Below, one piece after another: positions 334 to 61,134 of a DNA stretch of 64,000 bases. The stretch spans positions 248,001 to 312,000 of the IMG/VR virus record IMGVR_UViG_3300036853_000446; one strand, 5' to 3'. The notes beneath the pieces are model-generated. The model did no database searches and was not told the origin of the DNA. It saw only the letters and a list, made by a program, of their open reading frames with translations. The position numbers and the translations under genes were made by a program. Each line of letters begins with the position of its first letter. The first letter of the stretch is position 1.

Positions 334-340
334 CGGTGTA
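334..340 (+). promoter_or_regulatory. class-2 motif CGGTGTA
   Basis: 10 nt before ATG 351. Confidence 0.55.
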
Positions 341-350
341 CCCGGTCGGG

Positions 351-665
351 ATGCGCAAACCACTCACCTACCGCGACCTCCTCCGGCTGCTACGCGCCCA
401 CGACTCTCGGTTCGACATCCGCCCCGGCAAGGGCAGCGAACGGGTTCTCTGCCTCCAGGGCCGCCCGGTCACCTGCTGCCTGCCGCACCACGGCGACGGG
501 CACACGATTGGCGTCGGCCTGCTGACTCGCATCGAACGCGCCTTCAAACTGCCCCGGGGCTTCTTCGACCGGCGGGACAAGCGGAAGGCCGCGGTCGAGA
601 TTCGGGGCGCAGACGTCGTAGGCGCCGGCCGTCCCTCCTCGGCCACCTGGGAATCCCCAGCCTAA
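351..665 (+). CDS. HicA-like toxin-fold protein (GSE instead of GSH)
   Basis: YRDLLRLLRAH...GKGSE...PHHGDGHTIGVGLLTRI follows the HicA pattern. Confidence 0.6.
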   Translation: MRKPLTYRDLLRLLRAHDSRFDIRPGKGSERVLCLQGRPVTCCLPHHGDGHTIGVGLLTRIERAFKLPRGFFDRRDKRKAAVEIRGADVVGAGRPSSATWESPA

Positions 666-762
666 TCCTAGTTTTCTCGCCGACTTCCTCGAACGGACCG
701 ACCGACCGTGACATCGTCGGTCTCTCGCCGATTTGTCGACGTGCCGCCCACTCCTTTCTCGC

Positions 763-790
763 GGTTCAAACCGCCGGGCTCGCCCGTACT
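763..790 (+). promoter_or_regulatory. class-1 ECF-like promoter (variant GGTTCAAA...CCCGTACT)
   Basis: 16-nt spacing, ATG at 800. Confidence 0.55.
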
Positions 791-799
791 TCCGGCAGA

Positions 800-907
800 A
801 TGTCACTCACCGAATCCAAGAAGGCTCTCGCCAGCTCCGACCCCGTCATTTTCGCGCGCAGGCCCGATTACTGGTTGAAGCCGGCGTTCCGCGGACTTCC
901 GATCTAG
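800..907 (+). CDS. 35-aa small protein
   Basis: MSLTESKKALASSDPVIFARRPDYWLKPAFRGLPI directly after a class-1 motif; below the ORF-track cutoff. Confidence 0.35.
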   Translation: MSLTESKKALASSDPVIFARRPDYWLKPAFRGLPI

Positions 908-1024
908 GTCACTTTGGTCCGGGCTGGAGACGGCCGTCATGAGAACCCCTTGCCGATCCTAGGGGTTGGGGGCGAGTTTGAATTTTTAGGGAACGAAATC
1001 GGCGGCTGGCGTCGTCATGGTCTT

Positions 1025-2691: not shown

Positions 2692-2723
2692 ATCGGTTTC
2701 GCCATCAGCGTGTCGTGAATCTT

Positions 2724-2980
2724 GTCGTGGTCTGGTGGGCTCCACGCAGCCTCTCAAATCTCTCTGCTCGCTGAGGAGGCAGCGCAACAGAACCAACGTC
2801 GTGGTCAGGTGGGCTCCACGCAGCCTCTCAAATGTCCGAGATCGCGACTTTAGGGTATGTAAATTCGTCGTGTCGTGGTCAGGTGGGCTCCACGCAGCCT
2901 CTCAAAGAAGGTGAACCCGTTGCTGTATGCCTTCGCGTCTACGAGTCGTGGTCAGGTGGGCTCCACGCAGCCTCTCAAAG
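2724..2980 (-). CRISPR. CRISPR array A1 (4 repeats, 3 spacers)
   Basis: 36-nt repeats GTCGTGGTCWGGTGGGCTCCACGCAGCCTCTCAAAK at 2724, 2798, 2872, 2945; spacers 37-38 nt; leader on the right. Confidence 0.95.
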
Positions 2981-4438: not shown

Positions 4439-4445
4439 CGGTGTA
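4439..4445 (+). promoter_or_regulatory. class-2 motif CGGTGTA
   Basis: 11 nt before ATG 4457. Confidence 0.55.
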
Positions 4446-4456: not shown

Positions 4457-4735
4457 ATGAAAGCCAAACACCGACTCTTCCTGTCCGACAAAATTCTTCG
4501 AGTCATCGGTCCTCGAGAGGTTTCACCTCATGACGTGGCCGAGCTTTTGAGAAAGCGCGATCGGAGACACCCAACCGAACCTCCGTGGACGCCAGAGAGT
4601 AGAGCACTCGACACGTATCTTTCGCTGGTAATGGGGACATTACCCGAGCTTATGCGGGTCCGCCCAAACATGTTCAAGGCCCGGAACCCACATCATTTTC
4701 TCCGCATCGTGTCGAACGACTCAGGGAAGAGTTAG
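4457..4735 (+). CDS. small basic protein, possible winged HTH
   Basis: ILRVIGPREVSPHDVAELL; start set by class-2 motif. Confidence 0.5.
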   Translation: MKAKHRLFLSDKILRVIGPREVSPHDVAELLRKRDRRHPTEPPWTPESRALDTYLSLVMGTLPELMRVRPNMFKARNPHHFLRIVSNDSGKS

Positions 4736-11773: not shown

Positions 11774-12521
11774 GTCGTGGTCTGGCCTCTTAACTCGAAA
11801 GACGAGCCGTCGTTGATGGGGACATGCGCTGAGTCGTGGTTGGGTGGGCTCCACGCAGCCTCTCAAATGGTATCGAGGAGGACGTCCTTCTCGCTGAACC
11901 GTCGTGGTCTGGTGGGCTCCACGTAGCCTCTCAAATCCACCAGGACGGACAAGCGTCCCGAGTAGTCGGCGTGTCGTGGTTGGGTGGGCTCCACGCAGCC
12001 TCTGAAATCGTCGGGCGAATCGTGTCTCATGCCGACAAGGTACTCGTCGTGGTCGGGTGGGCCCCACGCAGCCTCTCAAATCCGTTGAGAGAAGTAGTGA
12101 CCACTCGGTGTGGGATCTCGTCGTGGTCTGGTGGGCTCCACGCAGCCTCTCAAATTTTTCCTAAGGAGCGAGCCGGCGAACTATCCTCCCCGTCGTGGTC
12201 GGGTGGGCCCCACGCAGCCTCTCAAATCAAGATACCGCTGGTGCGAGACATTGGTGATACGTGGTCGTGGTTAGGTGGGCTCCACGCAGCTTCTCAAAAT
12301 CCATGACGGCGTCAGCGGTTGGTGAGGGTCATCCTCAAGTCGTGGTTGGGTGGGCTCCACGCAGCCTCTCAAATCAGCCGCTCAAATTACGCACCTCGCC
12401 ACGCTGGTTCCGTCGTGGTCAGGTGGGCTCCACGCAGCCTCTCAAATTCTTGTAATCGCCTGCGAGCCGTCCAGCCGCGGGTTGCGTCGTGGTCTGGTGG
12501 GCTCCACGCAGCCGCTCAAAT
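11774..12521 (-). CRISPR. CRISPR array A2 (10 repeats plus 1 internally deleted trailer repeat)
   Basis: Repeats at 11833, 11901, 11973, 12046, 12120, 12192, 12264, 12339, 12412, 12486; degenerate copy 11774-11794. Confidence 0.97.
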
Positions 12522-17550: not shown

Positions 17551-18318
17551 ATCGTGGTCTGGTAAGGCTCCATACAGCCTCGCGAATAAGTTCACAGCTT
17601 GAAAGGTCAAGGACAGATCGGGTTGTCGTGGTTGGGTGGGCTCCACGCAGCCTCTCAAATCGGTCGCCTTTGACACGGGCATACTCATATCATGCTGCCA
17701 GTCGTGGTTGGGTGGGCTCCACGCAGCCTCTCAAATCCGAGCACCACCGCGTCGCGACGCGGAAGGTAGTGGGGTCGTGGTTGGGTGGGCTCCACGCAGC
17801 CTCTCAAATCGCAAGCCAAGGATGCACGTGCTACGGACGACCGCGTGTCGTGGTTGGGTGGGCTCCACGCAGCCTCTCAAATCAAGCTGGCGGAAGCTGC
17901 CGTTGACCACTCTTCTATCGTCGTGGTCGGGTGGGCTCCACGCAGCCTCTCAAATCTGAACCTCGAGTGGATGCTTAATGGACCGCTCATCGTCGTGGTC
18001 GGGTGGGCTCCACGCAGCCTCTCAAATCCAATGCGCGACGAGGCTCGTCACCTGCGTCGGATTGTCGTGGTTGGGTGGGCTCCACGCAGCCTCTCAAATT
18101 CGCCTCGAAGCAGTCGGCACTCGTATCGGATGCGCACGTCGTGGTCGGGTGGGCTCCACGCAGCCTCTCAAATTCTGCGCCTGCAGGTGCGGGCTACCGA
18201 TCACAGTGGCGTCGTGGTCGGGTGGGCTCCACGCAGCCTCTCAAATCCGTCAAGTCCTCGGCCCCGAGACGGAGGTTGTGCTGTCGTGGTCGGGTGGGCT
18301 CCACGCAGCCTCTCAAAT
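17551..18318 (-). CRISPR. CRISPR array A3 (10 repeats plus 1 degenerate trailer repeat)
   Basis: Repeats at 17625, 17701, 17774, 17847, 17920, 17992, 18064, 18138, 18211, 18283; degenerate copy 17551-17587. Confidence 0.97.
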
Positions 18319-18472
18319 CTGTAGCCATAAAGTCCAGGCAATATAGGGCATTGCAAGGCGGATTGCGAGAGGGTCATTTACGAGCTGGTTTGTTCGCGCG
18401 TAACCCTTCGATTTGCTTTGCGTGAACTATCGAATCACCTTCGCGCTCGCCGAAGCCCAGAGGGGCTTCGGC
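18319..18472 (-). promoter_or_regulatory. conserved CRISPR leader copy 3 with distal hairpin
   Basis: Aligns with other leaders; perfect GCCGAAGCCC-AGAG-GGGCTTCGGC at 18449-18472. Confidence 0.85.
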
Positions 18473-22529: not shown

Positions 22530-23167
22530 GCGGGGCGCGCTCGCCCGAAGCCGACATGATTCGGCTAAAGTCACTCAGCGGTCGAGCGCCACGTCCGACT
22601 GAGGCCGGTTGCAAGGCAAGGTGCGCCGCGGTCGACATGACGTTCTCCACACTCGGGGCACCAGAGGAGCATTGGGATTGTCTCGGTCATGAGCCGTTTT
22701 TACACCGTCGAGCTGCCACCTCGCATACGGTCCCATTTTGGTGAGCCAAATGCGCGGCAGTCATTGGACGCGGCACCGATTTTAGCGCATGATTTATCTG
22801 CGGCTCGGGGAAACCCGAGCATGCAAAACCACCCACCGACCACCCTAAAGAACCACCACCGTGATCATTTCCGCCAAATTCGCCAGTGCTTGCCCCTGTT
22901 GCTCGAGCCGTATCGCCGTCGGCAGCAAGGTCGAGTGGAGCAAGGGTGTAAAAGCCCGCCATATCACCTGTGCGGCCAAGCCCGGCGCCGTCACGGTAGC
23001 GAGTGCTCCGCGAGTGAGCGCTTACGGTCGCGGCTCCGGCGGAGGTCTCTGGACGGGCTGCTCGTGCGGCTCTCGCGAGGGTAACCCGCGTGACAGTGAC
23101 TGCGCGAGCTGCCAATACGACAACGAGTGATCCCTGCGCTTCCGGCAAGAAAAGAGACCACCACCAA

Positions 23168-30442: not shown

Positions 30443-30730
30443 ATGGGAAGTTCGCGAAGCGTAAAGTACACCGTTGAAATGACCACCACCGACGTTACGG
30501 GGGGTAAAACCTACACCTGCACGCCCGCCGAGTGGCGCACGCGGACGCGCGGACGATTCGAAGGTCTCGGCAAGCCGACGACCGAGAACCTCGCGAAATA
30601 CGTCGCCGCCTTCGAGGCGTCGACCCAGGATAAGGGTTGCAACGCACACCTCGGAGTCCAGAAGGTCATCCAGGCCAGCATTCTCGACCAGGACACATGG
30701 GTTGTCGTCGCGACGTTCTCGAGCCATTGA
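30443..30730 (+). CDS. hypothetical protein
   Basis: GKPTTENLAKYV...GCNAHLG. Confidence 0.65.
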   Translation: MGSSRSVKYTVEMTTTDVTGGKTYTCTPAEWRTRTRGRFEGLGKPTTENLAKYVAAFEASTQDKGCNAHLGVQKVIQASILDQDTWVVVATFSSH

Positions 30731-34079: not shown

Positions 34080-34086
34080 CGGTGTA
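34080..34086 (+). promoter_or_regulatory. class-2 motif CGGTGTA
   Basis: 10 nt before GTG 34097. Confidence 0.55.
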
Positions 34087-36341: not shown

Positions 36342-36348
36342 TACACCG
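36342..36348 (-). promoter_or_regulatory. class-2 motif CGGTGTA
   Basis: 10 nt before ATG 36331. Confidence 0.55.
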
Positions 36349-41922: not shown

Positions 41923-42159
41923 GATGTCAGGTCTCCCTGTGAGGACGCTGCGACCGGAGCCGCAACGTCGAGTAGAACCTAAAGATAGCATGGCTCTCTA
42001 GTGGGCGCCAGCGGGGCGGGCGGCCGGGGACTTACGCAATCGAGTCCAGGGTTCAAAAGGCTTCCCGGAGCTGCCTCGCGACCAAAGGCGAATCACGGTC
42101 ATTGTTTCCCTTCCCTTTGGATCCCGTCGGAGGCAAACTCGCACCCCATTGAGGGGTCA

Positions 42160-43602
42160 ATGGCAAAGAGGAAGTCAAAGACGACGAGTGTCCAGCCCGG
42201 TGAAGTGCTGAAGGGGTTTCGCGTCAAACTCAGACCGACCCAGGAGGATCTGCGTTACCTATCGACGGCTCAAGTCGAGCTGATGACGATGTGGAACATC
42301 CTCGTGATAACGTGGAAGACGCACGTCGATTACTGCGTTCGGCATTGCGAGGACCTCGGGCTCATCGGACCCGTACCGCCACGACCGACCTCGGACCAAG
42401 ACACGAACGTGCCCGAAGAGATCGCCGAATGGGAGGAGTACGCGGCACTCTGCCGTGAACGCCGCCGAAGCGCTCGCGAGCAGTGTAAGACCGTCGAGGG
42501 TCTGACACGGCGCGACTGGGCGAATCGAGCCCTCGATTACCACCAACTTGATCTCACGGAGAAGGCTCGAGAGCAGACGCAGATCGATTACCGCGTCCTG
42601 CGGTCCGCCGTGAAGGGCGTCACGACGGCCCATATGGCCCAGGCCGTCATCGAGACTTACAAGGCGTCATTGCAGAAAGGGCGGCCGCCACCGAAGCTCA
42701 AGAGACGCCCGCTCGAGATGCCTCTCTTGCTTCGCAGCGGTAAGGATTTGCTTACGCTTTCAGCGAACCACTCCACCCGAACGACGGCGTCCGGGAAGAA
42801 GCGGCTCACCGGCTCCCACCACTGCATCGTCAAGTTTGGCCCGCTCAAGATCGGGGGACGATTCAACCGCCCGCCGTCGGGTCCCTTCCTCCAGGGCATT
42901 TCGATCGGGCTCGAGAAGGACGGCTGGTACGCCTCCGCGAAGGTCCGGACCCTACCTGAGGATCTGCCGAAGCCAACGAAGGAAATCATCGCGATCAACC
43001 CGGGACTCGAATGCCTCTACGCCGACAATGAGGGTTATGTGATCGAGAACCCACGGGGCAACGCTTACTCCCTCCGGATGCGCGAGATGAGCGATTGGAT
43101 CGACGACGCCGAAACCCAGTGGGACGAAGCCCACCGTCGCAACCATCAAGCTCGATATGCCGAGCGTTTCGCGCGGCACACGGAGGACCTCATCTACAGC
43201 CGCATCCTCCCGAAGCTCGCCGATTACGAGACGATTCTCATCGGCAAGGCCGGCAAAACCGCCGCTCAAGGTCGACAAAACCGCATCAGTAAGAACGACG
43301 AGGGCGGCTACGTTTCGGCCATGAGCTTGATGCAGCAGCTCATCATCCAGAGGTATGGCCTCTATGACCCCGACGAGAATCCGACGGGGCGAGTGCGAGT
43401 GCTGGAGTCCATGGGAATTTCCCGGAGGTGCTCGCGTTGCGGAACCGAGCACGCAACCCGTTATCAACGCAACAATTTACGCCGGTATGACCAACAGACC
43501 GATTGCCAGGAACCCTCGTGTCGGCTCAAGATACACGTCGATGTTGGCGCCGCTCGCAACCTGCTTTCCAACTATCGGGATTTGCAGGCGGCAGCAGAAT
43601 GA
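42160..43602 (+). CDS. compact type V (TnpB/Cas12-like) effector with inactivated RuvC, 480 aa
   Basis: TnpB-like GFRVKLRPT, PKLKRR, GWYAS; RuvC-I IIAINPG (D->N), RuvC-II TILIGK (E->G), Zn finger CSRC...CQEPSC, RuvC-III HVDVGAARNL; RBS GAGGGG; array 2 nt downstream. Confidence 0.88.
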   Translation: MAKRKSKTTSVQPGEVLKGFRVKLRPTQEDLRYLSTAQVELMTMWNILVITWKTHVDYCVRHCEDLGLIGPVPPRPTSDQDTNVPEEIAEWEEYAALCRERRRSAREQCKTVEGLTRRDWANRALDYHQLDLTEKAREQTQIDYRVLRSAVKGVTTAHMAQAVIETYKASLQKGRPPPKLKRRPLEMPLLLRSGKDLLTLSANHSTRTTASGKKRLTGSHHCIVKFGPLKIGGRFNRPPSGPFLQGISIGLEKDGWYASAKVRTLPEDLPKPTKEIIAINPGLECLYADNEGYVIENPRGNAYSLRMREMSDWIDDAETQWDEAHRRNHQARYAERFARHTEDLIYSRILPKLADYETILIGKAGKTAAQGRQNRISKNDEGGYVSAMSLMQQLIIQRYGLYDPDENPTGRVRVLESMGISRRCSRCGTEHATRYQRNNLRRYDQQTDCQEPSCRLKIHVDVGAARNLLSNYRDLQAAAE

Positions 43603-43604
43603 CC

Positions 43605-44869
43605 CTCAGAACGGCAGCGTGGTGCCTACCCTCCCACGACGAGGAGTTCGGTGGCCGCGCGCGATGATGTGCAAGACCTCAGAACGGCAGCGTGGTGCCT
43701 ACCCTCCCACGACACGAGGTCGGAAAGAGTCTCAATCTCGGCAATCTCACGCTCAGAACGGCAGCGTGGTGCCTACCCTCCCACGACGACCTGCGGAAGA
43801 AGGGCCTTCGCCGATCTACTTGGGCTCAGAACGGCAGCGTGGTGCCTACCCTCCCACGACGAAGTGACGTCTACCAATTGGGCTTGGTCCTCTATCACTC
43901 AGAACGGCAGCGTGGTGCCTACCCTCCCACGACTTATGGGGATGAACCGAGAACCAGCCTCGATCGATGTCTCAGAACGGCAGCGTGGTGCCTACCCTTC
44001 CACGATAGCCGCGTCCTCCAAACTGCCGAATCGATTCCGAAACTCAGAACGGCAGCGTGGTGCCTACCCTCCCACGACGGCATCTCCACTCGTTCCCTCG
44101 TCCTCCGGGTATGGACCTCAGAACGGCAGCGTGGTGCCTACCCTCCCACGACTACGGCTGGCGGTCCCCCGCCAAACGAGGTTGGCGTGCTCAGAACGGC
44201 AGCGTGGTGCCTACCCTCCCACGACGAAACATCACGCGCCTGGGCAACAGCATCAGCGTCGCCATCTCAGAACGGCAGCGTGGTGCCTACCCTCCCACGA
44301 CCAACGACATGACCCCGTGGAACCTGTGAGCTTGCTCGGCGCTCCTCGGAACGGCAGCGTGGTGCCTACCCTCCCACGACGGAAAGACTCGTTCGTGATC
44401 CCGAGTCGACCCCCATGCTCAGAACGGCAGCGTGGTGCCTACCCTTCCACGACGAGGAGTTCGGTGGCCGCGATGGTGATGCGCAAGCCCTCAGCATGGC
44501 AGCGTGGTGCCTACCCCTCCACGACTTCGAGCAACACGTCAACGCGCGTATTGGCTCGTTCAGCCTCAGAGTGGCAGCGCGGTGCCTACCCTTCCGCGAC
44601 ACGTCCCCCAGTTAGCGGAAAGCCTCGGTACTGGTCTCAGAATGGCAGCGTGGTGCCTACCCTTCCACGACCACATCCGTGGATAGAGAGTCCCCCTCCG
44701 GAGTCAACCTCAGAACGGCAGCGTGGTGCCTACCCTTCCACGACTTTCCGATCTCGTTAAAGTAGATGCGGACTTATGGCAGCGTGGTGCCTACCCTTCC
44801 ACGACGTGCACGGGTCTTCTCAAAGAAAGACGCCTCAGAACGGCAGCGTGGTGCCTACCATTCCACGAC
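43605..44869 (+). CRISPR. CRISPR array B (18 repeats, 17 spacers)
   Basis: 36-nt CTCAGAACGGCAGCGTGGTGCCTACCCTYCCACGAC at 43605, 43678, 43752, 43825, 43898, 43971, 44043, 44117, 44190, 44266, 44345, 44418, 44490, 44565, 44636, 44709, ~44770 (5'-degenerate), 44834; decay increases away from the gene. Confidence 0.98.
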
Positions 44870-45157
44870 CCAATGCTCATAGATGGCAGACGCCACAGGC
44901 TTACAGAACTGGCTAGGCTTCCCCGATCTCAACGCGCTGGACATAGCTCGCGTCGTCGCTCATCCAGACAGCGATTGCCTCTCCGTTGTCGAGACGCTGG
45001 TAGACGTGGAGTTCGAGGCGAAAATCGAATTCCAGGACGCCGCCCTCGACGTCTTCCTCCGCATAGTCCCACCATTCGGCCATGCTCTTTTGTCGGGCGG
45101 AGCCGACGGCAGTTGCGTGGCCGACGGCCGGCTTTGCGGAGTTTTTGTCGATCGGGA

Positions 45158-45626: not shown

Positions 45627-45902
45627 CTAACGCGCGCCGCCGTCCGTCTCGGGTCCACGCTTCGCTTCCTCGAGTCGGCGGAGCAGCTCGTCCCCACTGT
45701 CGGCCGTAATCGTCACGTCGTGCCGGCTGATGCAGAGTCCCCAATCCTCACACGTCCGGTGCACGGCCGAATCTGAGAAGCCTTTCTTGAAGAAGACTGC
45801 TTTGACGTCCTCGACGGTGGGGTTCTCGGGCGCGTCTTTTTCTGGCCAGATTTCTTCGATCGTGAACGAATCACAAACATAAATATCGATCCTGAACTTC
45901 AT
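45627..45902 (-). CDS. hypothetical protein
   Basis: EEIWPEKDAPENPTVEDV. Confidence 0.55.
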   Translation of the reverse strand: MKFRIDIYVCDSFTIEEIWPEKDAPENPTVEDVKAVFFKKGFSDSAVHRTCEDWGLCISRHDVTITADSGDELLRRLEEAKRGPETDGGAR

Positions 45903-45975
45903 GACTGCGACTACACCGCCGGGCTCTTGTTCTGATTTTTGGTTTGACTTATGCTGCACGGGCTCTTCTCGGCGC

Positions 45976-46160
45976 GGTTGAGAGGCTGCGTGGAGCCCAC
46001 CCAACTACGACGGTATCATTCGGCTTTTTATCAGGTCCCCCGATCCGGAGTAACTTGCGAGGCTGCGTGGAGCCCACCCAACTACGATATGCCCGTGCCG
46101 ACGTGGCGCTTCCAAGAAAGGTACATTTGAGAGGCTGCGTGGAGCCCATCACACCACGAC
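45976..46160 (+). CRISPR. CRISPR mini-array A4 (3 family-A repeats)
   Basis: Repeats at 45976, 46053, 46125 in the ATTTGAGAGG...CCACGAC orientation. Confidence 0.9.
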
Positions 46161-46250
46161 TTGCTTGGATCGTTGACTTGATAGGTTTTCAACCCTGATG
46201 ACAGGCTTGCACCGATGAACCCGGTTGGCTCGACCCCAAACCCGGGTAAC

Positions 46251-46749: not shown

Positions 46750-47292
46750 TCAGTCATTCAGCCAGGACATGAAATCATCATCATCTTCCGACTCGGGTCC
46801 CTCGTCTGATTCTCGAGCCTCCGCGGGATCCCGCAGGAAATCCTTCCCGGCCATCGTGACGCGCAGCAACGTCGTCTGGTTCTCCGCGCTCGGATCCCAC
46901 ACGTACGCGGCGGCCACTTTCTCGAGGCCCTTACGCCACCGACCGCGAACCAGGACGCCGGGTCTGTCACCGTTCGACCACTGTTCATACCACTCGAAAC
47001 ACGCGCCCGGGGCCAACATCAAGATGTCGGCGTACCGCCCTCTCGACGTCTTCCGCCTCTCGCCTGTTGTCACGAGGATCCCGGCTTGACGAAGATTCGT
47101 GATCCGAGCCGAAATCGTGTTGTAGCGCTCGCCGCCGAGCAGGTTGAAGGCTTCATCGCAGGTGAAGTTGCCACCCTGATAGAGCACGATGATCCTCTTG
47201 ACGTCGTCATGATCGCTCGTGAGGGATTCGGCAGCGGCCTTGCTGGTCTCGCTATCTTTGATGTAGGGGATCCGTTTTTTATTCTCAGTCAT
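46750..47292 (-). CDS. winged-HTH protein
   Basis: FTCDEA...TISARITNLRQAGILVTTGERRKTSRGRYA. Confidence 0.75.
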   Translation of the reverse strand: MTENKKRIPYIKDSETSKAAAESLTSDHDDVKRIIVLYQGGNFTCDEAFNLLGGERYNTISARITNLRQAGILVTTGERRKTSRGRYADILMLAPGACFEWYEQWSNGDRPGVLVRGRWRKGLEKVAAAYVWDPSAENQTTLLRVTMAGKDFLRDPAEARESDEGPESEDDDDFMSWLND

Positions 47293-47301: not shown

Positions 47302-47308
47302 TACACCG
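47302..47308 (-). promoter_or_regulatory. class-2 motif CGGTGTA
   Basis: 9 nt before ATG 47292. Confidence 0.55.
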
Positions 47309-47628: not shown

Positions 47629-47874
47629 TCATCGCTTCTCTCCGGGAGACTTGCCCCCGACCCTGATCCTTCTTCGAAGGGCCTCTGCCCGGATTGTCTC
47701 GGAAAACGCCTTGAACGCAGCGTCGTCCAGAGCACTGAGAGGCTCGATTCCTGGATCTTCGAGTTTTTTGTCCAAGGCTTCCGCGATGATCAAACGCGCG
47801 GACTCGACGTGACCTGCTTGGAGGAGCACGGCGAGGGTTATTAGAATCCGCTGCTCTCCGATTGTGAGCGTCAT
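47629..47874 (-). CDS. hypothetical protein
   Basis: GGGTGTA variant at 47886-47892, 11 nt upstream. Confidence 0.55.
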   Translation of the reverse strand: MTLTIGEQRILITLAVLLQAGHVESARLIIAEALDKKLEDPGIEPLSALDDAAFKAFSETIRAEALRRRIRVGGKSPGEKR

Positions 47875-47946
47875 CGGTTCGAGTTTACACCCAAATTTGG
47901 GCGGGTGAAACGCCGAACCGCCTCTCGGTCGGTGGGCAGTAGCTGC

Positions 47947-47953
47947 CGGTGTA
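47947..47953 (+). promoter_or_regulatory. class-2 motif CGGTGTA
   Basis: 10 nt before ATG 47964. Confidence 0.55.
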
Positions 47954-47963: not shown

Positions 47964-48566
47964 ATGAATCGCGCCGAGCTACGAGCCCTCGTCTCCGAGC
48001 TGCAGGAACGGAATCCCGAGGTGCGGGTCGAGCTGCAGCGCCTGCTTACTCCGCGGGGAGCAATGCGAGACGGAAGGTATTTTCAGGTCAACGTCACCCT
48101 GCAAGTCGTGGAGTCCTTCTATATCGACCAGGGAATCATGACTACCGCAAATGTTGTTGGTCAGCAGATGACAGCGGAAATTCAGACGCTCCGCGAGTCA
48201 TGTTCACAAGGAACGCGCGACAGACTGCGCCACGAACGACTCGTGAGAGAAGCCCCAGAGAGCAGCGTCGCCCGTCAACTCCTGCAAGCATCCCCACGGC
48301 TACGGCCATATCTGTGGTCACCAACGCCCGAATCACCACCGCCGTCGCTGCTGCAGACGCCACCACGACCAATGAATCAGGTACCCGTACCCTTCCCCGA
48401 CTCATTCCGCCGGGCTCTTTCGATCCAGGTGCCCACGATGCCGGCGCCGGCAGCACCAAAGATTAAAGTCGGGGAAGCTGTCACTCAACCCCGGCCGTCA
48501 CTGTGGGACCTCCTCGAGTCGGACGACTCTTCTGATGACGGAGCAGCCGCCACGAAAGCCAAATAA
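47964..48566 (+). CDS. Pro-rich hypothetical protein, tandem paralog 1
   Basis: MNRAELRALV...SLWDLLESDD. Confidence 0.7.
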   Translation: MNRAELRALVSELQERNPEVRVELQRLLTPRGAMRDGRYFQVNVTLQVVESFYIDQGIMTTANVVGQQMTAEIQTLRESCSQGTRDRLRHERLVREAPESSVARQLLQASPRLRPYLWSPTPESPPPSLLQTPPRPMNQVPVPFPDSFRRALSIQVPTMPAPAAPKIKVGEAVTQPRPSLWDLLESDDSSDDGAAATKAK

Positions 48567-48578: not shown

Positions 48579-48585
48579 CGGTGTA
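48579..48585 (+). promoter_or_regulatory. class-2 motif CGGTGTA
   Basis: 10 nt before ATG 48596. Confidence 0.55.
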
Positions 48586-48595: not shown

Positions 48596-49054
48596 ATGAC
48601 GCGCGCTGAACTGAAAGCAATTATTGCCGACCTGCAGGCGGCGCACCCAGACGTCAAAATCGAACTCAACCGGAGGCTGAGCACACGAGGGGGTCTCTAC
48701 GACACGCCAGGGTTTCGCGTCAGCATCAAGCTTCCCGTCGTTCACGACGTCTACTTCGCGACGGAGGACGCTTGGGATGTCGCTAGCGTCGTTGAACGCA
48801 TCGAGGAAGAGATGACCACCCTCATTGAGCTAACCTCCGAACGTGGAATCCTACGCACAAGGGCAGCACGCATGATGCAGGAATCCGCGCGAGCCGCAGC
48901 CGCCGAACGGCTCCTTACCCCTCCAATTCCTCCTCCAATTCCTCAACCGAGACTCGATCCGCCACCGGTGGCGATTCCGCGAGCCGCCGTCTCGTCTGCC
49001 TCTCCGCCCGGGTCGTCATTATGGGAACGCCTCGAGTCCTCCGACGAGGATTGA
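48596..49054 (+). CDS. Pro-rich hypothetical protein, tandem paralog 2
   Basis: MTRAELKAII...SLWERLESSDED. Confidence 0.7.
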   Translation: MTRAELKAIIADLQAAHPDVKIELNRRLSTRGGLYDTPGFRVSIKLPVVHDVYFATEDAWDVASVVERIEEEMTTLIELTSERGILRTRAARMMQESARAAAAERLLTPPIPPPIPQPRLDPPPVAIPRAAVSSASPPGSSLWERLESSDED

Positions 49055-49340
49055 TTCAACTCACCCAAAAAACACCCGCCCCTCGGCCCCAGCGCCGGTG
49101 ACGAGCCCTCTCGCGCCCCGCACCCTGTGTTCCGCGAGCCGGTCGCCCTCATCTTTGATTCCTTCCAACAAAAGGACGAGTCAAAGATCAAACCCAACCG
49201 GTTAAATCCTTGGGTTTTTGGAGTTTCGAAAGGTGCGCCATGACTTATCCCAAGTTCTCAATCGTTAGGGAACCGAATGGACGTTCAGCATCCTTTTCGG
49301 AGTCTCCGGTGTACTACCGAATCACGAAGGGGGTCATCCG

Positions 49341-57075: not shown

Positions 57076-58206
57076 TCAATGCGGCACGACGCTGTCATCG
57101 TCAAGCTCGTCATCGGCAGCAGCTCCGACGCTACCGTGATCGCTGGCGTATCGAGCGCTCAACTGCTCGAGGTCGAGCTGGGTGGGGGGCATCGCGTAGC
57201 CGATCGTCTTGAGTCGGTTCAAATACTTCTTCAGCGTCTCTTGTTCGATGTCACTTTGCGACGGGCGCGACAAGAGCTGCCACTCGACGGTCGGGGAGTC
57301 ATCGGGAGACGTTCTTCGGGTCGTGTTTGGATTGGCGAGGGCGCACACGCCCGCGACGAGGCGCGCGAAAAGAACCATGATGCCTTCGCTAGCGTCGCCC
57401 TCAGGGATGATCGGTTTCATCAAGTGCTGTCGGCGGACGAGGCCCAGCTGCTCTGTCAGCAGCGATTCACCCTGGAGAAAGCCGCGGTCGCCGGACATCC
57501 CGTACAAGCCCCAGCGCTCGCGGGGGCGCTCTGCCATAAGGCGCTCGACCTTCGCGAAGGCGCTTCGCACATCGCTCGGGACTTCGTCCTTCAGGGACGG
57601 CAGGACCGGCGTTTCGTACCGGTGGAGCATCACCTCGGTGTACTTGACGCCGTCCCATTCGATGTTGAGCCCCTCTGGCAGCCGAATCAGGAATGCATCC
57701 CACGGTGGCACGAGCCCGTCGACGAACTCGGGCGGGTAGCTCGTAAGCATCATCGCGGCGGCCAGCCCAGCATCCAACGAGATCGCCGGACACCTGAACG
57801 ATTGCCAGCGACTCTCCCGGTACAAGGTCTGAATTGTGCTGAGGGTGCGATCGAAGTCTGCCGGCCCCCTCTCGTTGAATATCATGCCGATCGCGCTTTT
57901 GGCGAAGCACGGGGGGAGCAGTTCCCCGAACTGCTTCAGCTTGAGGATGAAGTCGCCCGAATCAGCCGTGACGGGGAGCGCCGTGCCGACGAGAGTTCCC
58001 AGCAGGCGCCACGGAATGTCGTAGTAAGGGCTCTCTGACTCGCGCTGTTGAAGGGCATCCTCCTCGATGGCGCCGAGTAGACGCTCGATCTTCTTTATGT
58101 GGAGGTCCGACGATTCGCGGCTCGCACCAGCTGGCCTTCTCTGCTGCTGGCGAAGCTGTTTTCTCTGCTGCCTGCGGGCAGACTTGATTTTGGACTTGTG
58201 CGACAA
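57076..58206 (-). CDS. hypothetical protein
   Basis: 376-aa ORF, basic N-terminus. Confidence 0.65.
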   Translation of the reverse strand: MSHKSKIKSARRQQRKQLRQQQRRPAGASRESSDLHIKKIERLLGAIEEDALQQRESESPYYDIPWRLLGTLVGTALPVTADSGDFILKLKQFGELLPPCFAKSAIGMIFNERGPADFDRTLSTIQTLYRESRWQSFRCPAISLDAGLAAAMMLTSYPPEFVDGLVPPWDAFLIRLPEGLNIEWDGVKYTEVMLHRYETPVLPSLKDEVPSDVRSAFAKVERLMAERPRERWGLYGMSGDRGFLQGESLLTEQLGLVRRQHLMKPIIPEGDASEGIMVLFARLVAGVCALANPNTTRRTSPDDSPTVEWQLLSRPSQSDIEQETLKKYLNRLKTIGYAMPPTQLDLEQLSARYASDHGSVGAAADDELDDDSVVPH

Positions 58207-58394
58207 TTTGGGGGTTCGCTCTGCTTGGGGTTTCTATTAGACGCGGATGCCTGACAGCTGACCACGGTGACAGCACCGAATCCGCTTTACAGCGTCCGAA
58301 GTGGGAGGCTCCTCTGGAGTACACCGAGACGAGCGAATAATGCATATATATGCCATATTCGCTCCGGGGTCAAGCCGCATTTATCTAAGCGATT

Positions 58395-58665: not shown

Positions 58666-58672
58666 CGGTGTA
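58666..58672 (+). promoter_or_regulatory. class-2 motif CGGTGTA
   Basis: 9 nt before ATG 58682. Confidence 0.55.
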
Positions 58673-58681
58673 CTTGTATGG

Positions 58682-58846
58682 ATGGCAGCACGTCGGACCC
58701 GTTCACCATCACAAGCGCCATCAGAGCCGAATGCCGAGACGGTGCGCGTAACCTGTTACCAGGTCGACGTTTCGCGGGAACAGCAACAAGCCATTCATCA
58801 GCAGCTTCTCGAATTACTCGCTGAAATTTATCGGAACCTTAAATGA
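58682..58846 (+). CDS. 54-aa protein coupled to the recombinase
   Basis: MAARRTRS...QLLELLAEIYRNLK; ATGA overlap with 58843; not in ORF track. Confidence 0.55.
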   Translation: MAARRTRSPSQAPSEPNAETVRVTCYQVDVSREQQQAIHQQLLELLAEIYRNLK

Positions 58847-60420
58847 AGGCTGCAATCTACGCCCGTGTGTCGTCCGACCAGCAAAGGGAGCGCCACACCA
58901 TCGGCTCGCAGCTCACCGAGCTACCCAAGTACGCAAAAAGCCAAGGCTGGACGGTTGTCCGACTCTACCAAGACGACGGCAAGTCGGGAGAGAGTATCGA
59001 CGGGCGTCCAGAGTTTCAGGCACTTCTCGAGGACGCCGAGAAGAAACTCTTTGAAATTGTCCTCGTCATCGACCTCGACCGCATCACTCGCTCGAAACGT
59101 GATCAGGAGGGGGCTTTCATCTACGACACGTTTCGGTTGCATGGCATCAAGCTGGCGACTCCGAGCAACGGTCTCATCGATCTCGAGAATGAGGACCAGG
59201 ACCTTCAGATCGGTATCCTTCAGGCTTTCGCAAAGTTTGAGAAGCGGAAATTTCTCCGCCGAACGATGCGAGGTAAGTATCAGGCCGCTAAAGACGGGAA
59301 GCGGTATGGTTCGATCGATCCCTACGGGTATCGGTGGGTTATCGACCCGGTCTTGAAGGCGGGGGGCTCGTACCAGATCGTCGAGGACGAAGCTAAAGTC
59401 GTTCGTCGCATCTACAGCCTCGCTCTCGAAGGTCATGGCGTGGCAATGATCGCTTGGATGTTAGAGAATGAGGGTATTCGGACGCGACCACGCGCACCCC
59501 GTGGCACCGAAGGCAAGATCGCCGGTCCTTGGTGGCGCTCGTCTGTGCTGAAGGTTCTGCATTCCGTGACGTACACGGGATCGTTCAAAGTCCTCAAGGG
59601 GAAGGAGAGCGAACCCCTCTCGATCAAGGTCCCGCCTATTGTCACCCGGGCAACCTGGGACGCAGCCCAGAGGGCGCTCACACAGCGCAAGATGTCCTCG
59701 GGCGCTCCGGCACGACACGACCACCTCTTACGCGGATGCGCCTCGTGCGGCGTCTGCGGGTACAAGATGTGGATCGTTACCCCTAGGGCCGGCAAAAGCG
59801 CTGCCTACTACAGATGCTGCACGACCAACGGATGGCGCGGCATGGGCCTCAAGGGCCCATGTGGCAACAAGCACCACCGAGTGGACCGCACGGACCATGA
59901 GGTCCAGACGAAGGTGCTCGAGATTCTGCAAAATCCAAAGCTGCTAGCTCAAGCGTGTTCGTTGCAGGGTGAACCTACGGACGGGGTCGACTGGAAAGGT
60001 CAGCTCCGAGGTCTCGAGCAAAAGCTTGCGATACTGGATGAGGCCGCGTCCGACGCGATGGTCCGTCAGCGTCGGGGAATCATTCCTTCCGCGGTCGCCG
60101 AGAAGGAACTCCTGAACATTGCCCGCGAGCGAAAGCTCGTTGACCGAAACGTCAAACTAGCGCGTGTCAGATCCGGTAAAGCCTCAGCTGAACGCAGCCT
60201 GCGCCAAAATATCGAGGATCAAGCAAAGGCCCTAAGCAGCGGACTCGATCAAGCGGACTTTGAAACGCGACGGAAGATTATCACCCTGCTCCTTCCGAGA
60301 GAGCTGGGCTGCGGTGTCGTCCTGCACCGGGACGGTGGTATCGACATCAAATGGGTCCTGCCACTGCCCGGCGACATCGAGCACGTGGAACTACGCACCG
60401 CCCTCAAAAAAGTTGGGTGA
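58843..60420 (+). CDS. large serine recombinase (integrase)
   Basis: AAIYARVSS, DDGKSG, RPEFQALL, DLDRITR, PYGY recombinase domain, CGVC...YYRC...C Zn ribbon, coiled coil. Confidence 0.95.
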   Translation: MKAAIYARVSSDQQRERHTIGSQLTELPKYAKSQGWTVVRLYQDDGKSGESIDGRPEFQALLEDAEKKLFEIVLVIDLDRITRSKRDQEGAFIYDTFRLHGIKLATPSNGLIDLENEDQDLQIGILQAFAKFEKRKFLRRTMRGKYQAAKDGKRYGSIDPYGYRWVIDPVLKAGGSYQIVEDEAKVVRRIYSLALEGHGVAMIAWMLENEGIRTRPRAPRGTEGKIAGPWWRSSVLKVLHSVTYTGSFKVLKGKESEPLSIKVPPIVTRATWDAAQRALTQRKMSSGAPARHDHLLRGCASCGVCGYKMWIVTPRAGKSAAYYRCCTTNGWRGMGLKGPCGNKHHRVDRTDHEVQTKVLEILQNPKLLAQACSLQGEPTDGVDWKGQLRGLEQKLAILDEAASDAMVRQRRGIIPSAVAEKELLNIARERKLVDRNVKLARVRSGKASAERSLRQNIEDQAKALSSGLDQADFETRRKIITLLLPRELGCGVVLHRDGGIDIKWVLPLPGDIEHVELRTALKKVG

Positions 60421-60632
60421 CGCGCTCGTAACACCTGCAGCGCTCGCGAGCGCACAGGCTGAGGCGGAACTAGGCTGATCTCTCGGCATTTCGAGGTAAT
60501 AATGTGGCCATACCCTGCTCAAGTTGTGGCCACATTATTACCGGCGTAAACTGTTGATTCTTCGTGAATTTTTGAGTGACCTCTCATGCTTGCGGCGCCG
60601 TTCTCAGGCCGATTCGCGGGTATGCTGCACCG

Positions 60633-61070
60633 ATGGCCGAGACCACTGAACGGCCATCTTCTCCGGCGGCTCATGCTAGACTCGAGACGATGTCGACCGC
60701 CGAGCGCGTTGTCTCTCAATTTATCGAGGTTGATTTCGAAGTCGCTGCCATGAGCAACGTTCTCCCCGAGGACAGCGGCGTCGAGGATGCCGTCCTCTGG
60801 ATCAGCCCGGGTGAGTCCGATGGTAAAGACCTGGCGCACGGCCCCCGCCTCAAGGTCGTGCTGGGCACCAAGATAACGGCAGAGAGCCTCCGCGATTCCG
60901 TGAGCGTGACGATTGAGGCAACCCCACGGGTCATCGGGTCGCGGACGCTCCCGGGCAAGGTCAAGCGTCAGGTGGAAGCCTTCATTCACCTGAATCAGGA
61001 CGTCTTGCTCCGCCACTGGCGCGGTGAGCTTGGGTCGAAGCAGACGCTCAACCTGCTTCAGCCCATCTGA
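60633..61070 (+). CDS. DUF4160-like protein, paralog of 4860-5549
   Basis: GKDLAHGPRLKV...FIHLNQDVLLRHW. Confidence 0.7.
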   Translation: MAETTERPSSPAAHARLETMSTAERVVSQFIEVDFEVAAMSNVLPEDSGVEDAVLWISPGESDGKDLAHGPRLKVVLGTKITAESLRDSVSVTIEATPRVIGSRTLPGKVKRQVEAFIHLNQDVLLRHWRGELGSKQTLNLLQPI

Positions 61071-61127
61071 AGTCCCGGACATCTCTACACACGGGCGCGA
61101 ACGTCGGGGCCCTCCCCAATGAGGTCG

Positions 61128-61134
61128 CGGTGTA
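61128..61134 (+). promoter_or_regulatory. class-2 motif CGGTGTA
   Basis: 9 nt before ATG 61144. Confidence 0.55.

What the first reader, a model, noticed from the sequence alone, without database searches (positions are those of the whole stretch)
334..61134. Second promoter class: CGGTGTA 9-11 nt before start codons
Seen at 334, 4439, 34080, 47947, 48579, 58666, 61128 (+), 36342, 47302 and variant 47886 (-), each 9-11 nt from a start codon, plus 49307 (27 nt, with an SD). I found no shared -35 and no TAnnnT consensus. It precedes a different gene set (ParB, helicase, recombinase operon, nuclease, HTHs) from class 1. Inference: a -10-only promoter for an element-encoded sigma factor or polymerase, possibly a second temporal class. 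I did not count all occurrences exhaustively.
Basis: partly seen in the sequence, partly recalled or inferred. Interest (0 to 1): 0.65.

Follow-up and report, generated by a model that had tools for sequence, protein, structure and literature searches.

The report
Leaderless-gene promoter of soil jumbo phages
The 7-base word CGGTGTA sits 9-11 bases before about 65 start codons of this 407-kb soil phage and its relatives, and is most likely a -35-less promoter element that starts transcription at the start codon, probably read by an unusual sigma factor that the phage encodes.

Summary
The window has 16 CGGTGTA (3.5 expected). Twelve have ATG or GTG 9-11 nt downstream (P=2e-10).

The window lies in a 407,634-bp IMG/VR jumbo-phage contig from soil. 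That contig has 101 sites, and 43 have ATG at +9 to +11 against a 3.7% background (P=2e-34). All seven positions are near-invariant, and there is no -35.

Five related phage contigs from other samples show the same word at the same spacing, including before orthologous genes that are only 30-55% identical. In one relative the word extends to CGGTG-TAnnnT, with C at -1 of the ATG. That is the geometry of a -10 hexamer whose transcript starts at the A of ATG, so the mRNA is leaderless.

Linked genes head transcription units and encode DNA-metabolism functions. No phage RNA polymerase was found.

Every large motif-bearing phage encodes a divergent sigma-70-family protein. It has a sigma domain 2 split by an inserted winged helix, and the window's form has no region 4. 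A complete relative without the motif lacks this protein.

No RNA data exist, so the start sites and the sigma assignment are inferred. The closest analogues are phiEco32 gp36 and T4 gp55 single-element promoters. I rate it a new variant of a known kind.

The parts
334..340 (+). CGGTGTA, 10 nt before ATG 351. The ORF is 351-665 (104 aa, weak HicA-like hit).
4439..4445 (+). CGGTGTA, 11 nt before ATG 4457. The ORF is 4457-4735 (92 aa, no family).
22701..22707 (-). CGGTGTA, 10 nt before ATG 22690. The ORF is only 39 aa (22571-22690), so the target is uncertain.
30467..30473 (-). CGGTGTA in a divergent intergenic region. There is no start at 9-11 nt and the nearest ATG is at 22 nt. It is a possible leadered copy or a chance copy, and it overlaps a class-1-like motif on the + strand.
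34080..34086 (+). CGGTGTA, 10 nt before GTG 34097 of the ParB-like gene (34097-35092, 331 aa).
36342..36348 (-). CGGTGTA, 10 nt before ATG 36331. The ORF is 35768-36331 (187 aa, DUF7768 / nucleoside 2-deoxyribosyltransferase-like).
45912..45918 (-). CGGTGTA, 9 nt before ATG 45902. The ORF is 45627-45902 (91 aa).
47302..47308 (-). CGGTGTA, 9 nt before ATG 47292. The ORF is 46750-47292 (180 aa, weak winged-HTH hit).
47886..47892 (-). Variant GGGTGTA, 11 nt before ATG 47874. The ORF is 47629-47874 (81 aa). It lies back to back with the copy at 47947.
47947..47953 (+). CGGTGTA, 10 nt before ATG 47964. The ORF is 47964-48566 (200 aa).
48579..48585 (+). CGGTGTA, 10 nt before ATG 48596. The ORF is 48596-49054 (152 aa).
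49307..49313 (+). CGGTGTA, 27 nt before ATG 49341 of the 843-aa helicase/HNH-like gene, with GAAGGGGG in between. This is a leadered version that carries a Shine-Dalgarno sequence.
57636..57642 (+). CGGTGTA inside the opposite-strand gene 57076-58206 with no start downstream. Most likely a chance copy.
58320..58326 (-). CGGTGTA in the intergenic region, about 114 nt upstream of the 376-aa gene 57076-58206 (-). It is a possible leadered copy. Undecided.
58666..58672 (+). CGGTGTA, 9 nt before ATG 58682. The 54-aa ORF overlaps the start of the serine recombinase gene 58843-60420, which suggests an operon head.
61128..61134 (+). CGGTGTA, 9 nt before ATG 61144. The ORF is 61144-61953 (269 aa).
63448..63454 (-). 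CGGTGTA, 9 nt before GTG 63438. The ORF is 63079-63438 (119 aa).

Best explanation
CGGTGTA is the core, -10-type element of the main non-structural promoter class of a clade of soil jumbo phages. Its last two bases, TA, correspond to -12/-11 of a sigma-70-family -10 element. RNA polymerase therefore starts 9-11 nt downstream, at or within a base or two of the A/G of the start codon, and these roughly 65 genes per genome are made as leaderless mRNAs. No -35 element is used.

The polymerase is the host's core enzyme. The specificity factor is most likely a phage-encoded, highly divergent sigma-70-family protein (contig 180602-181720, minus strand, 372 aa, P0001). It has a sigma domain 2 interrupted by an inserted excisionase/MerR-type winged helix-turn-helix. 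In this phage it has no region 4. Its own gene carries an ordinary TTGACG-N17/18-TA... promoter, a long leader and a Shine-Dalgarno sequence, which fits an early gene read by the unmodified host enzyme that then switches on the CGGTGTA regulon.

Shown: the motif, its spacing, its conservation, its position at unit heads, the presence and fold of the sigma-like protein, and its co-occurrence with the motif.

Inferred: My odds: promoter for leaderless or near-leaderless mRNAs about 0.85.
For: 1. Position. 43 of 101 copies in the contig have ATG at +9 to +11 (P=1.7e-34). The corresponding figures are 65 of 132 in relative G001 and 38 of 102 in G005. GGTGTA is the top hexamer 8-22 nt before ATG-ORFs in all three genomes in an unbiased count.

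2. Stringency. Every single-base change except C1 to T abolishes the link to start codons.

3. Conservation.
- The fixed-spacing pattern CGGTGTA-N10-ATG occurs 42 times in G001, 20 in G005, 4 in G006, 4 in G007 and 2 in G009. Reversed-word controls give 0-2.
- 10 of 12 YGGTGTA copies are start-linked in each of two further 21-kb loci (L086, L087), and most fall at gene starts called independently by the source pipelines.
- Eight orthologous G000/G001 gene pairs, with alignments starting within the first 2-18 residues, keep the motif at 29-53% protein identity. They include ClpX, SNF2 and a large methylase. The ClpX zinc-finger profile starts at residue 3 of the motif-defined ORF.

4. -10 geometry.
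- In G001 the word continues as TAnnnT (T in 45 of 68), followed by 6 nt and then ATG.
- C at -1 of the ATG is 71% in G001 and 80% in G005, the usual pyrimidine(-1)/purine(+1) start context.
- The few canonical TTGACG-N15/16-TAnnnT sites in this contig are followed by ATG after 5-7 nt, which is the same geometry.

5. Unit heads. The median upstream gap is 116 nt for linked genes against 55 nt for other genes. Gaps under 20 nt occur in 4% against 34%. The upstream neighbour is divergent in 39% against 24%.

6. Start codons at linked sites are ATG or GTG. TTG was not counted at linked sites. At my own calls for the other genes, 48 of 416 starts are TTG.

7. No phage RNA polymerase was found by Pfam models or by the catalytic motif. 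E. coli-type sigma-70 promoters are not enriched.

8. The sigma-like protein.
- The G001 and G005 homologues hit Pfam Sigma70_r2 above the cut-off (29.3 and 29.6 bits against 24). Two long-form members hit the same place below the cut-off.
- Two independent AlphaFold2 models (pLDDT 84 and 74) give sigma domain 2 as the best structural matches. The first gives Z 7.6, rmsd 2.5 over 80 residues to RpoE 5uxx_C. The second gives Z 7.8, rmsd 2.7 over 77 residues to 9m98_F.
They include chain F of the phiEco32 gp79/RNAP open complex 9m7y.
- The conserved blocks resemble regions 2.1-2.2 and 2.3-2.4 on either side of the insert.

9. Co-occurrence. The protein is present in G000, G001, G005, L086 and L087, which all use the motif. 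It is absent from the complete 134.7-kb relative G002, which has 1 copy of the pattern.

10. The upstream region of the sigma-like gene is conserved as TTGAC(G/T)-N17/18-TA.. plus a leader and a Shine-Dalgarno sequence in G000, L086, L087 and G001.

11. Docking of residues 140-330 on the E. coli beta' clamp helices (residues 240-330) gave weak support.
- Score 0.37, best control 0.00.
- The mark was reached by 58 of 80 solved complexes and 2 of 110 mismatched pairs. At 0.60 or under it was reached by only 7 of those 80 solved complexes and by both mismatches that passed.
- The runs agree in at least 83% of contacts and the partner's pLDDT is at least 70.
Against: - There is no transcript data of any kind. 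The only runs holding the sequence are soil-metagenome DNA, so no start site has been seen.
- T at -7, a hallmark of sigma-70-type -10 elements, is absent in this genome (5 of 59) and in G005.
- The structural matches have Z below 8, which for helical domains can reflect only a common arrangement. Foldseek against PDB and a sequence profile against PDB gave nothing significant.
- The window-genome member itself has no Pfam hit.
- The short forms in G001 and G005 may keep a region-4-like HTH, although their promoters also lack a -35.
- The co-occurrence rests on few genomes, and only one is a non-user.
- The host is unknown, so I could not test whether the host's own genes use the word.
- About 35 of the 101 copies are not start-linked. 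Roughly 22 are expected by chance, extrapolating from the window shuffles.
Confidence: 0.6

Rival explanations
1. The word is a promoter, but it is read by the host's own primary sigma holoenzyme as a strong 'extended -10'-like element that makes a -35 unnecessary. No phage sigma is involved. The sigma-like protein does something else.
For: - In G001 the word is followed by a canonical TAnnnT with ordinary spacing to the start.
- The contig also carries a few TTGACG-N15/16-TAnnnT sites with the same leaderless geometry, so the host seems able to use leaderless mRNAs.
- The regulon includes methylases, nucleases and helicases, which are often early genes.
- The host is unknown, so its consensus cannot be checked.
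Against: - Seven near-invariant bases with no tolerance for single changes is unlike housekeeping promoters.
- T at -7 is missing in two of the three large genomes.
- The TG lies directly next to TA, not one base away as in the TGn extended -10 (sequence).
- The putative host-type promoters of the sigma-like gene look quite different: they have a -35, a long leader and a Shine-Dalgarno sequence.
- The motif is absent from the complete relative G002.
Confidence: 0.2
2. The word is the binding site of a phage transcription factor, either an activator or a repressor (for example one of the HTH proteins). It is placed next to a weak, degenerate core promoter and is not the element that sigma itself reads.
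For: - It is a short, asymmetric, invariant word.
- The phage encodes many HTH proteins. These include a sigma-r4 plus wHTH protein and the two excisionase-type HTH domains inside P0001.
Against: - The fixed +/-1 nt spacing to the start codon and the TA(nnnT) register are what a core promoter element gives.
- Nothing else conserved that could serve as the core promoter lies nearby.
Confidence: 0.1
3. The word acts in the RNA, as a non-canonical ribosome-binding or processing signal 9-11 nt before the start codon.
For: - The position is fixed relative to start codons.
- GGUG could pair with CACC of the 16S 3' end (general knowledge of the anti-Shine-Dalgarno sequence).
Against: - It is nearly absent from genes inside operons: gaps under 20 nt occur in 4% of linked genes against 34% of the others.
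- Only 4 bases could pair, and at a spacing too long for a Shine-Dalgarno sequence.
- C1 and TA are invariant without any pairing partner.
- The TAnnnT extension and the C at -1 in relatives have no meaning in RNA.
- Other genes carry GAAAGG/GGAGG-type Shine-Dalgarno sequences.
Confidence: 0.04
4. It is a chance or compositional artefact, or a piece of a repeated mobile sequence.
For: By raw count the word ranks only about 1,700th among 7-mers, and about 22 copies are expected by chance, extrapolating from the window shuffles.
Against: - Positional P values are 1e-25 to 1e-53 in three genomes.
- The flanks are unrelated, so it is not a repeat.
- It is conserved before orthologues.
Confidence: 0.01

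Closest known systems
phiEco32 gp36-dependent middle/late promoters (single element tAATGTAtA)
   Same: - One highly conserved short element containing TGTA, with no -35.
- The start lies 6-8 bp after the element, which puts it 8-10 bp after TGTA. Here the start codon is 9-11 nt after TGTA.
- It is read by the host core enzyme with a phage sigma that lacks region 4 (PMC8948821).
- The sigma chain of the phiEco32 open complex 9m7y is among the structural matches of the phage protein (Z 6.0-6.2).
   Different: - The sequence differs (CGGTGTA, GC-rich upstream half).
- There are about 65 sites per genome rather than six.
- The transcripts would be leaderless.
- The candidate sigma has a winged-helix domain inserted inside domain 2 and, in the long form, an extra N-terminal HTH.
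- There is no detectable sequence similarity to gp36.
- Nothing has been tested biochemically here.
T4 late promoters (TATAAATA at -10) read by gp55 (own knowledge of the T4 literature)
   Same: - A single stringent -10-type element without a -35.
- It is read by a small phage sigma-like protein that has only a domain-2 equivalent.
   Different: - T4 late promoters serve late (structural) genes and need gp33 and the sliding clamp. Here the genes served are DNA-metabolism and other non-structural genes.
- The element is not AT-rich.
- No gp55, gp33 or gp45 relationship was tested.
Leaderless-gene promoters of Actinobacteria and Deinococcus (TAnnnT about 6-7 nt before the ATG; e.g. PMC4633059 for mycobacteria, listed)
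   Same: The geometry is the same: TA at -12/-11 and the start codon at +1, with ATG/GTG starts only. In relative G001 the full TAnnnT is present.
   Different: - Those promoters are read by the host's primary sigma and tolerate any bases upstream of TA.
- Here five invariant bases, CGGTG, precede TA.
- T at -7 is dispensable in two of the three large genomes.
Sigma factors of RNAP-less jumbo phages (Iyer et al. 2021, PMC7824862)
   Same: This is a jumbo phage without its own RNA polymerase that encodes sigma-type proteins to redirect the host enzyme.
   Different: The sigma types described there are a minimal single-HTH form and RpoD-like forms in T4-like (group 2) jumbo phages. The protein here is an ECF-like domain 2 split by a winged helix, and it sits in a phage lineage with almost no recognisable core genes.

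Membership tests
sigma-70-family -10 promoter element | Invariant T-12 / A-11 | tested here: met
   TA closes the word and is invariant. Changing T6 or A7 abolishes the link to start codons.
sigma-70-family -10 promoter element | T at -7 (TAnnnT) | tested here: not met
   In this genome T is present in 5 of 59 linked sites at that position, and G005 also lacks it. It is met only in relative G001, in 45 of 68 sites.
sigma-70-family -10 promoter element | Transcription starts 6-8 nt after the hexamer | not testable with these tools
   No RNA run holds the sequence. Indirect evidence: the start codon lies 5-7 nt after the hexamer position, and C at -1 is 71-80% in relatives.
extended -10 (TGn) promoter | TG at -15/-14, one base away from the hexamer | tested here: not met
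   In CGGTGTA the TG directly abuts TA, which places it at -14/-13 (sequence).
single-element promoters of phage sigmas without region 4 (phiEco32 gp36 / T4 gp55 type) | One stringent 7-9 bp element near -10 and no -35 | tested here: met
   Information content is confined to the 7-mer in G000, G001 and G005, with nothing conserved from -50 to -1 of the word.
single-element promoters of phage sigmas without region 4 (phiEco32 gp36 / T4 gp55 type) | The phage encodes a sigma with domain 2 but no region 4 | tested here: inconclusive
   Domain 2 is supported by Pfam r2 hits in homologues and by structural matches with Z up to 7.8. The long form ends without a region 4. The Z values are modest, the window-genome member has no Pfam hit, and the short forms may keep a region-4.2-like HTH.
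single-element promoters of phage sigmas without region 4 (phiEco32 gp36 / T4 gp55 type) | Host core enzyme plus the phage sigma initiates at the element | not testable with these tools
   This needs in vitro transcription. The docking on the beta' clamp helices gave only weak support: score 0.37, best control 0.00, with the counts given in the For line.
ECF-sigma promoters (AAC in -35, CGT in -10) | A bipartite element with about 16-nt spacing | tested here: not met
   There is no upstream element for CGGTGTA. The separate 'class 1' motif GGATCAAAC-N13-CCCGTAC does fit this pattern.
Shine-Dalgarno ribosome-binding site | Complementary to the 16S 3' end, 5-9 nt before the start, and present at internal operon genes | tested here: not met
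   At most 4 bases (GGUG) could pair, at 11-13 nt. Linked genes almost never follow another gene closely.
phage single-subunit or multisubunit RNA polymerase promoters | The phage encodes its own RNA polymerase | tested here: not met
   There were no hits to PF00562, PF00623 or PF00940 in the contig, although the PF00940 control rang nowhere. No DxDGD-type catalytic motif occurs in long ORFs of G000, G001 or G005. The contig is estimated 86% complete, so absence is not proven.

The most novel reading that the evidence does not exclude
A clade of uncultivated soil jumbo phages runs most of its non-structural genes (about 15% of all genes) as leaderless mRNAs from a 7-bp promoter. The promoter is read by a new architecture of sigma factor, in which a winged helix-turn-helix inserted into domain 2 reads the duplex CGGTG immediately upstream of the -12/-11 TA. 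This insert replaces region 4 and -35 recognition and makes the -7 T dispensable.
Probability: 0.3. Interest if true: 0.75.

Novelty: new variant of a known kind. Interest (0 to 1): 0.55.

Why it matters
- If the reading is right, it gives a ready-made, testable promoter and sigma pair from a phage lineage whose genes are almost all unrecognisable.
- It would show a jumbo phage that lacks its own RNA polymerase and expresses dozens of genes as leaderless mRNAs.
- It points to a sigma domain 2 with an inserted DNA-binding domain as a possible new way to recognise a promoter without a -35.
- In practice the motif lets one fix start codons and transcription units in these phages. Standard gene callers have little to go on there, because Shine-Dalgarno signals are weak.
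- It also offers a compact orthogonal expression module to try in heterologous hosts.

Tried and rejected
- RNA evidence. The one run search found only two soil-metagenome DNA runs and no RNA. Read laying was therefore not used, because contigs cannot show RNA 5' ends.
- Known phages. There was no DNA or protein match in the INPHARED phage collection.
- Rfam and tRNA scans of the window found nothing.
- Phage RNA polymerase. Pfam beta, beta' and single-subunit models and a catalytic-motif regex found nothing.
- Sigma search with PF04542 on the contig gave only a 13-bit hit.
- The sigma-r4 hit at 108 kb turned out to be an r4 plus winged-helix protein without domain 2.
- Foldseek against PDB with both models gave nothing at E<=0.001. 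The profile of the family against PDB sequences gave no sigma.
- A search of IMG/VR with the sigma-like alignment found no further loci. The ParB-like protein found none either.
The host remains unknown, so the 'host sigma' rival could not be tested on a host genome.
- Searching the literature for the word itself returned only primers and unrelated uses.
- E. coli-type promoter and terminator scans were at chance level.
- PHROGs recognised only 2 of 10 large proteins of the long minus-strand block. 'Structural genes lack the motif' is therefore shown only for the baseplate-J-like and head-protease-like genes.
- My gene calls are a home-made codon-bias caller. Statistics that depend on them are approximate.

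Full report
**What the window is.** The window is bases 248001-312000 of a single 407,634-bp IMG/VR virus record. The record is linear, CheckV estimates it 86% complete, and its GC content is 60.5%. The contig has a cluster of 30 tRNA genes and a long one-directional block of large genes. That block includes a baseplate-J-like protein, a head-protease-like protein, UvrD and an NAD-ligase. It is therefore a jumbo phage. The only sequencing runs that hold it are soil metagenomes. It has no match in the collection of sequenced phages.

**The observation.**
- CGGTGTA occurs 16 times in the window, against 3.5 +/- 2.05 in dinucleotide-preserving shuffles.
- Six exact copies were missed. Three of them are also 9-10 nt before a start codon (22701-, 45912-, 63448-).
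- Twelve of the 16 have ATG or GTG at +9 to +11, against a background of 8.5% (P=1.8e-10).
- In the whole contig there are 101 copies. ATG follows at +9, +10, +11, +12 and +13 in 14, 19, 10, 5 and 7 of them. GTG follows at +9 to +11 in 10.
- 43 of 101 have ATG at +9 to +11 against 3.7% background (P=1.7e-34). The reversed word gives 0 of 40.
- Words of the same composition give 2.7% against 38% by a stricter ORF-based test.
- Each of the seven bases matters. Among all 21 single-base variants only TGGTGTA keeps the link, in 6 of 15 copies.
- Nothing is conserved outside the word: no -35 and no T four bases after the TA.
- About 22 copies are expected by chance, extrapolating from the window shuffles. 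This fits the roughly 30 copies that lie inside genes or on the wrong strand.

**Conservation in related phages.**
- A protein search of IMG/VR found a 371,739-bp relative, G001, with 55% identity in one protein. A second search found a 312,295-bp relative, G005, and several fragments.
- The fixed-spacing pattern CGGTGTA-N10-ATG occurs 42 times in G001, 20 in G005, 4 in G006, 4 in G007 and 2 in G009. The reversed pattern gives 0-2.
- A complete 134.7-kb relative, G002, has one copy.
- Counting all copies, G001 has 132 with 65 start-linked (P=1e-53), and G005 has 102 with 38 start-linked (P=2e-25).
- In an unbiased hexamer count 8-22 nt before ATG-ORFs, GGTGTA ranks first in all three genomes.
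- In two further 21-kb loci from other samples, L086 and L087, 10 of 12 YGGTGTA copies are start-linked. Most fall at gene starts called by the source pipelines, not by me.
- Eight orthologous G000/G001 gene pairs keep the word although the proteins are only 29-53% identical. They include ClpX, an SNF2 helicase and a large DNA methylase. The alignments begin within the first 2-18 residues, so these are the true N-termini.
- For ClpX, the Pfam zinc-finger profile begins at residue 3 of the ORF that the motif defines.

**Why it is a -10-type element for leaderless mRNAs.**
- In G001 the word continues as CGGTG-TA-k-g-k-T, with T in 45 of 68 copies at the sixth hexamer position. Six bases follow, and then ATG. 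That is a TAnnnT hexamer with the A of ATG at +1.
- The base before the ATG is C in 71% of G001 sites and 80% of G005 sites. This is the usual pyrimidine(-1)/purine(+1) start context.
- In the window's contig the few canonical TTGACG-N15/16-TAnnnT sites are also followed by ATG after 5-7 nt. The geometry is therefore used here with ordinary promoters too.
- Linked start codons are ATG or GTG, the only codons I counted at linked sites. At my own calls for other genes, 48 of 416 starts are TTG.
- Linked genes head transcription units. Their median upstream gap is 116 nt against 55 nt, only 4% follow another gene within 20 nt against 34%, and 39% have a divergent neighbour against 24%. This argues against a ribosome-binding signal, which would also occur inside operons.
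- Site 49307 is a leadered version. It has 27 nt and a GAAGGGGG Shine-Dalgarno sequence before the 843-aa helicase-like gene.
- E. coli-type promoters and intrinsic terminators are at chance level in the window.

**The genes served.**
- In the window: a ParB-like protein, a nucleoside-deoxyribosyltransferase-like protein, a winged-HTH protein, a helicase/HNH protein, the operon of a serine recombinase, and several ORFans.
- Elsewhere in the contig: UvrD, two N6/N4 DNA methylases, ClpX, SNF2, a HerA-like ATPase, a DHHA1 (RecJ-like) protein and HNH endonucleases.
- The recognisable virion genes (baseplate J-like, head protease-like) have no copy.
It precedes small ORFans of 93-180 aa, has 13 copies confined to 233-313 kb of this contig, and is absent from the relatives.
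- The two classes do serve different genes, and only CGGTGTA is clade-wide.

**Who reads it.**
- No phage RNA polymerase was found, so the host core enzyme is used.
- A profile search found a sigma-70 region-2 hit in a 303-aa protein of G001 (29.3 bits, cut-off 24). Its homologue in the window's contig lies at 180602-181720 on the minus strand (372 aa, P0001).
- G005 has a homologue too (29.6 bits to Sigma70_r2). Two long-form members hit the same place below the cut-off. P0001 itself does not hit.
- Twenty metagenomic homologues exist, all unnamed.
- An AlphaFold2 model of P0001 (pLDDT 84) found nothing with Foldseek. An exhaustive structural alignment gave sigma domain 2 in most of the top 50 rows. 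The best was RpoE 5uxx_C at Z 7.6, rmsd 2.5 over 80 residues. The rows also include sigma-E, sigma-H, sigma-W, sigma-28, sigma-32, the sigma-70 fragment, the -10-recognition fragment of SigC, AR9 gp226 and chain F of the phiEco32 gp79 open complex.
- A second model, of the G005 protein (pLDDT 74), gave sigma domain 2 in all of the top 9 rows (Z 6.5-7.8).
- These Z values are modest for helical domains. I count the fold as likely, not proven.
- The domain is split by an inserted excisionase/MerR-type winged helix (residues about 211-270). The conserved blocks on either side look like regions 2.1-2.2 and 2.3-2.4.
- The long form, found in this phage and in L086 and L087, ends without a region 4 and has an extra N-terminal HTH. 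The short forms in G001 and G005 may keep a weak region-4.2-like HTH.
- The protein is present in all five motif-bearing contigs that are large enough or cover the locus. It is absent from the complete non-user G002.
- Its own upstream region is conserved as TTGAC(G/T)-N17/18-TA.. followed by a leader of roughly 95-140 nt and a GGAGG-type Shine-Dalgarno sequence. This suggests an early gene read by the unmodified host enzyme.
- Docking of residues 140-330 on the E. coli beta' clamp helices gave weak support only.
  - Score 0.37, best control 0.00.
  - The mark was reached by 58 of 80 solved complexes and 2 of 110 mismatched pairs. At 0.60 or under it was reached by only 7 of those 80 and by both mismatches that passed.
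  - The runs agree in at least 83% of contacts and the partner's pLDDT is at least 70.

**Mechanism proposed.** The host holoenzyme transcribes the sigma-like gene. The new sigma then takes over the core enzyme and recognises CGGTGTA. Its domain 2 takes the TA, and possibly the inserted winged helix takes the duplex CGGTG. The complex opens the DNA and starts at the A/G of the start codon, so the mRNAs are translated without a leader. The first and last steps are inferred from sequence geometry, and the middle step from co-occurrence and fold. The differences after the TA (nothing in G000, G in G005, kgkT in G001) may reflect divergence of the sigma. I did not test this.

**Comparison with what is known.**
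- The closest analogue is phiEco32. Its sigma gp36 lacks region 4 and reads a single element tAATGTAtA, with starts 6-8 bp downstream (PMC8948821). T4 gp55 with TATAAATA is of the same kind (own knowledge).
- Jumbo phages without an RNA polymerase commonly encode sigma factors (PMC7824862).
- Leaderless promoters with TAnnnT are well known in mycobacteria (PMC4633059, listed).
- New here are the sequence, the scale (about 65 leaderless units per genome across a clade), the dispensable -7 T, and a sigma domain 2 with an inserted DNA-binding domain.
- I therefore rate it a new variant of a known kind.

**Limits.**
- There are no RNA data.
- The host is unknown. The ClpX search was uninformative.
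- The gene calls are home-made.
- Few genomes support the co-occurrence.
- The rival that the host's own sigma reads the word cannot be excluded (about 0.2).

Noticed in passing
window 42001-44870: A CRISPR array lies directly after an ORF (42001-43602, +) that has a weak Cas12f1-like TNB-domain hit. The array has about 17 repeats of a 37-nt unit beginning GTCGTGGGAAGGGTAGGCAC, with a period of about 73 nt, read on the minus strand. This is a phage-borne type V-like CRISPR locus.
   Followed up: partly
window 2724-2980, 11833-12521, 17625-18319 (+); 46011-46196, 63672-63822 (-): Five further mini-arrays carry a second, related repeat (GTCGTGGTCGGGTGGGCTCCACGCAGCCTCTCAAAT, period 72-74 nt), with 3-10 repeats each, scattered through the window. 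My codon-bias gene caller placed false ORFs over some arrays.
   Followed up: partly
window 766+, 16018+, 19938+, 30411+, 39399+, 40020+, 29101-, 63164-: A second motif, GGATCAAAC-N13-CCCGTAC(TC), lies 7-15 nt before the ATG of small ORFans (93-180 aa, no Pfam family). It looks like an ECF-sigma-type promoter (AAC ... CGT). It has 13 copies, all between 233 and 313 kb of this contig, and is absent from the related phages.
   Followed up: partly
G000 contig 138633-, 172801-, 244040+ (outside the window); window 6277+: There are a few canonical TTGAC(G/A)-N15-17-TAnnnT promoter-like sites. Three of them are followed by ATG after 5-7 nt, so leaderless starts also occur with ordinary promoters. 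Genome-wide such sites are no more frequent than in a reversed-sequence control (10 against 9).
   Followed up: partly
G000 contig 107861-108577 (-), locus L043:1117-1833: A 238-aa protein has a sigma-70 region-4 HTH plus a second winged helix and no domain 2. It belongs to a common viral family and sits next to an HNH endonuclease in the large-gene block. Its role is unknown. It could be a transcription factor or a small terminase-like protein.
   Followed up: partly
G000 contig 106770-107798, 207041-207523, 242457-243254; G001 about 362340: HNH endonuclease paralogues are scattered over the genomes, and each carries its own CGGTGTA copy at the usual spacing. These look like homing endonuclease genes that bring or acquire the phage promoter.
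   Followed up: no
G000 contig 140248-164650: A cluster of 30 tRNA genes lies on the minus strand, and several CGGTGTA copies lie between them.
   Followed up: no
G005 (IMGVR_UViG_3300048599_000213) 282622-282713 and 311116-311187: ARAGORN calls a tRNA with anticodon TTA (reads UAA, labelled 'tRNA-Stop') and a tRNA with anticodon TCA (labelled SeC) in this relative. This could hint at stop-codon suppression. It was not examined, and no alternative code was used.
   Followed up: no
window 58843-60420: A large serine recombinase (resolvase, recombinase and zinc-ribbon domains) sits in a jumbo phage, downstream of a 54-aa ORF that carries the CGGTGTA promoter.
   Followed up: no
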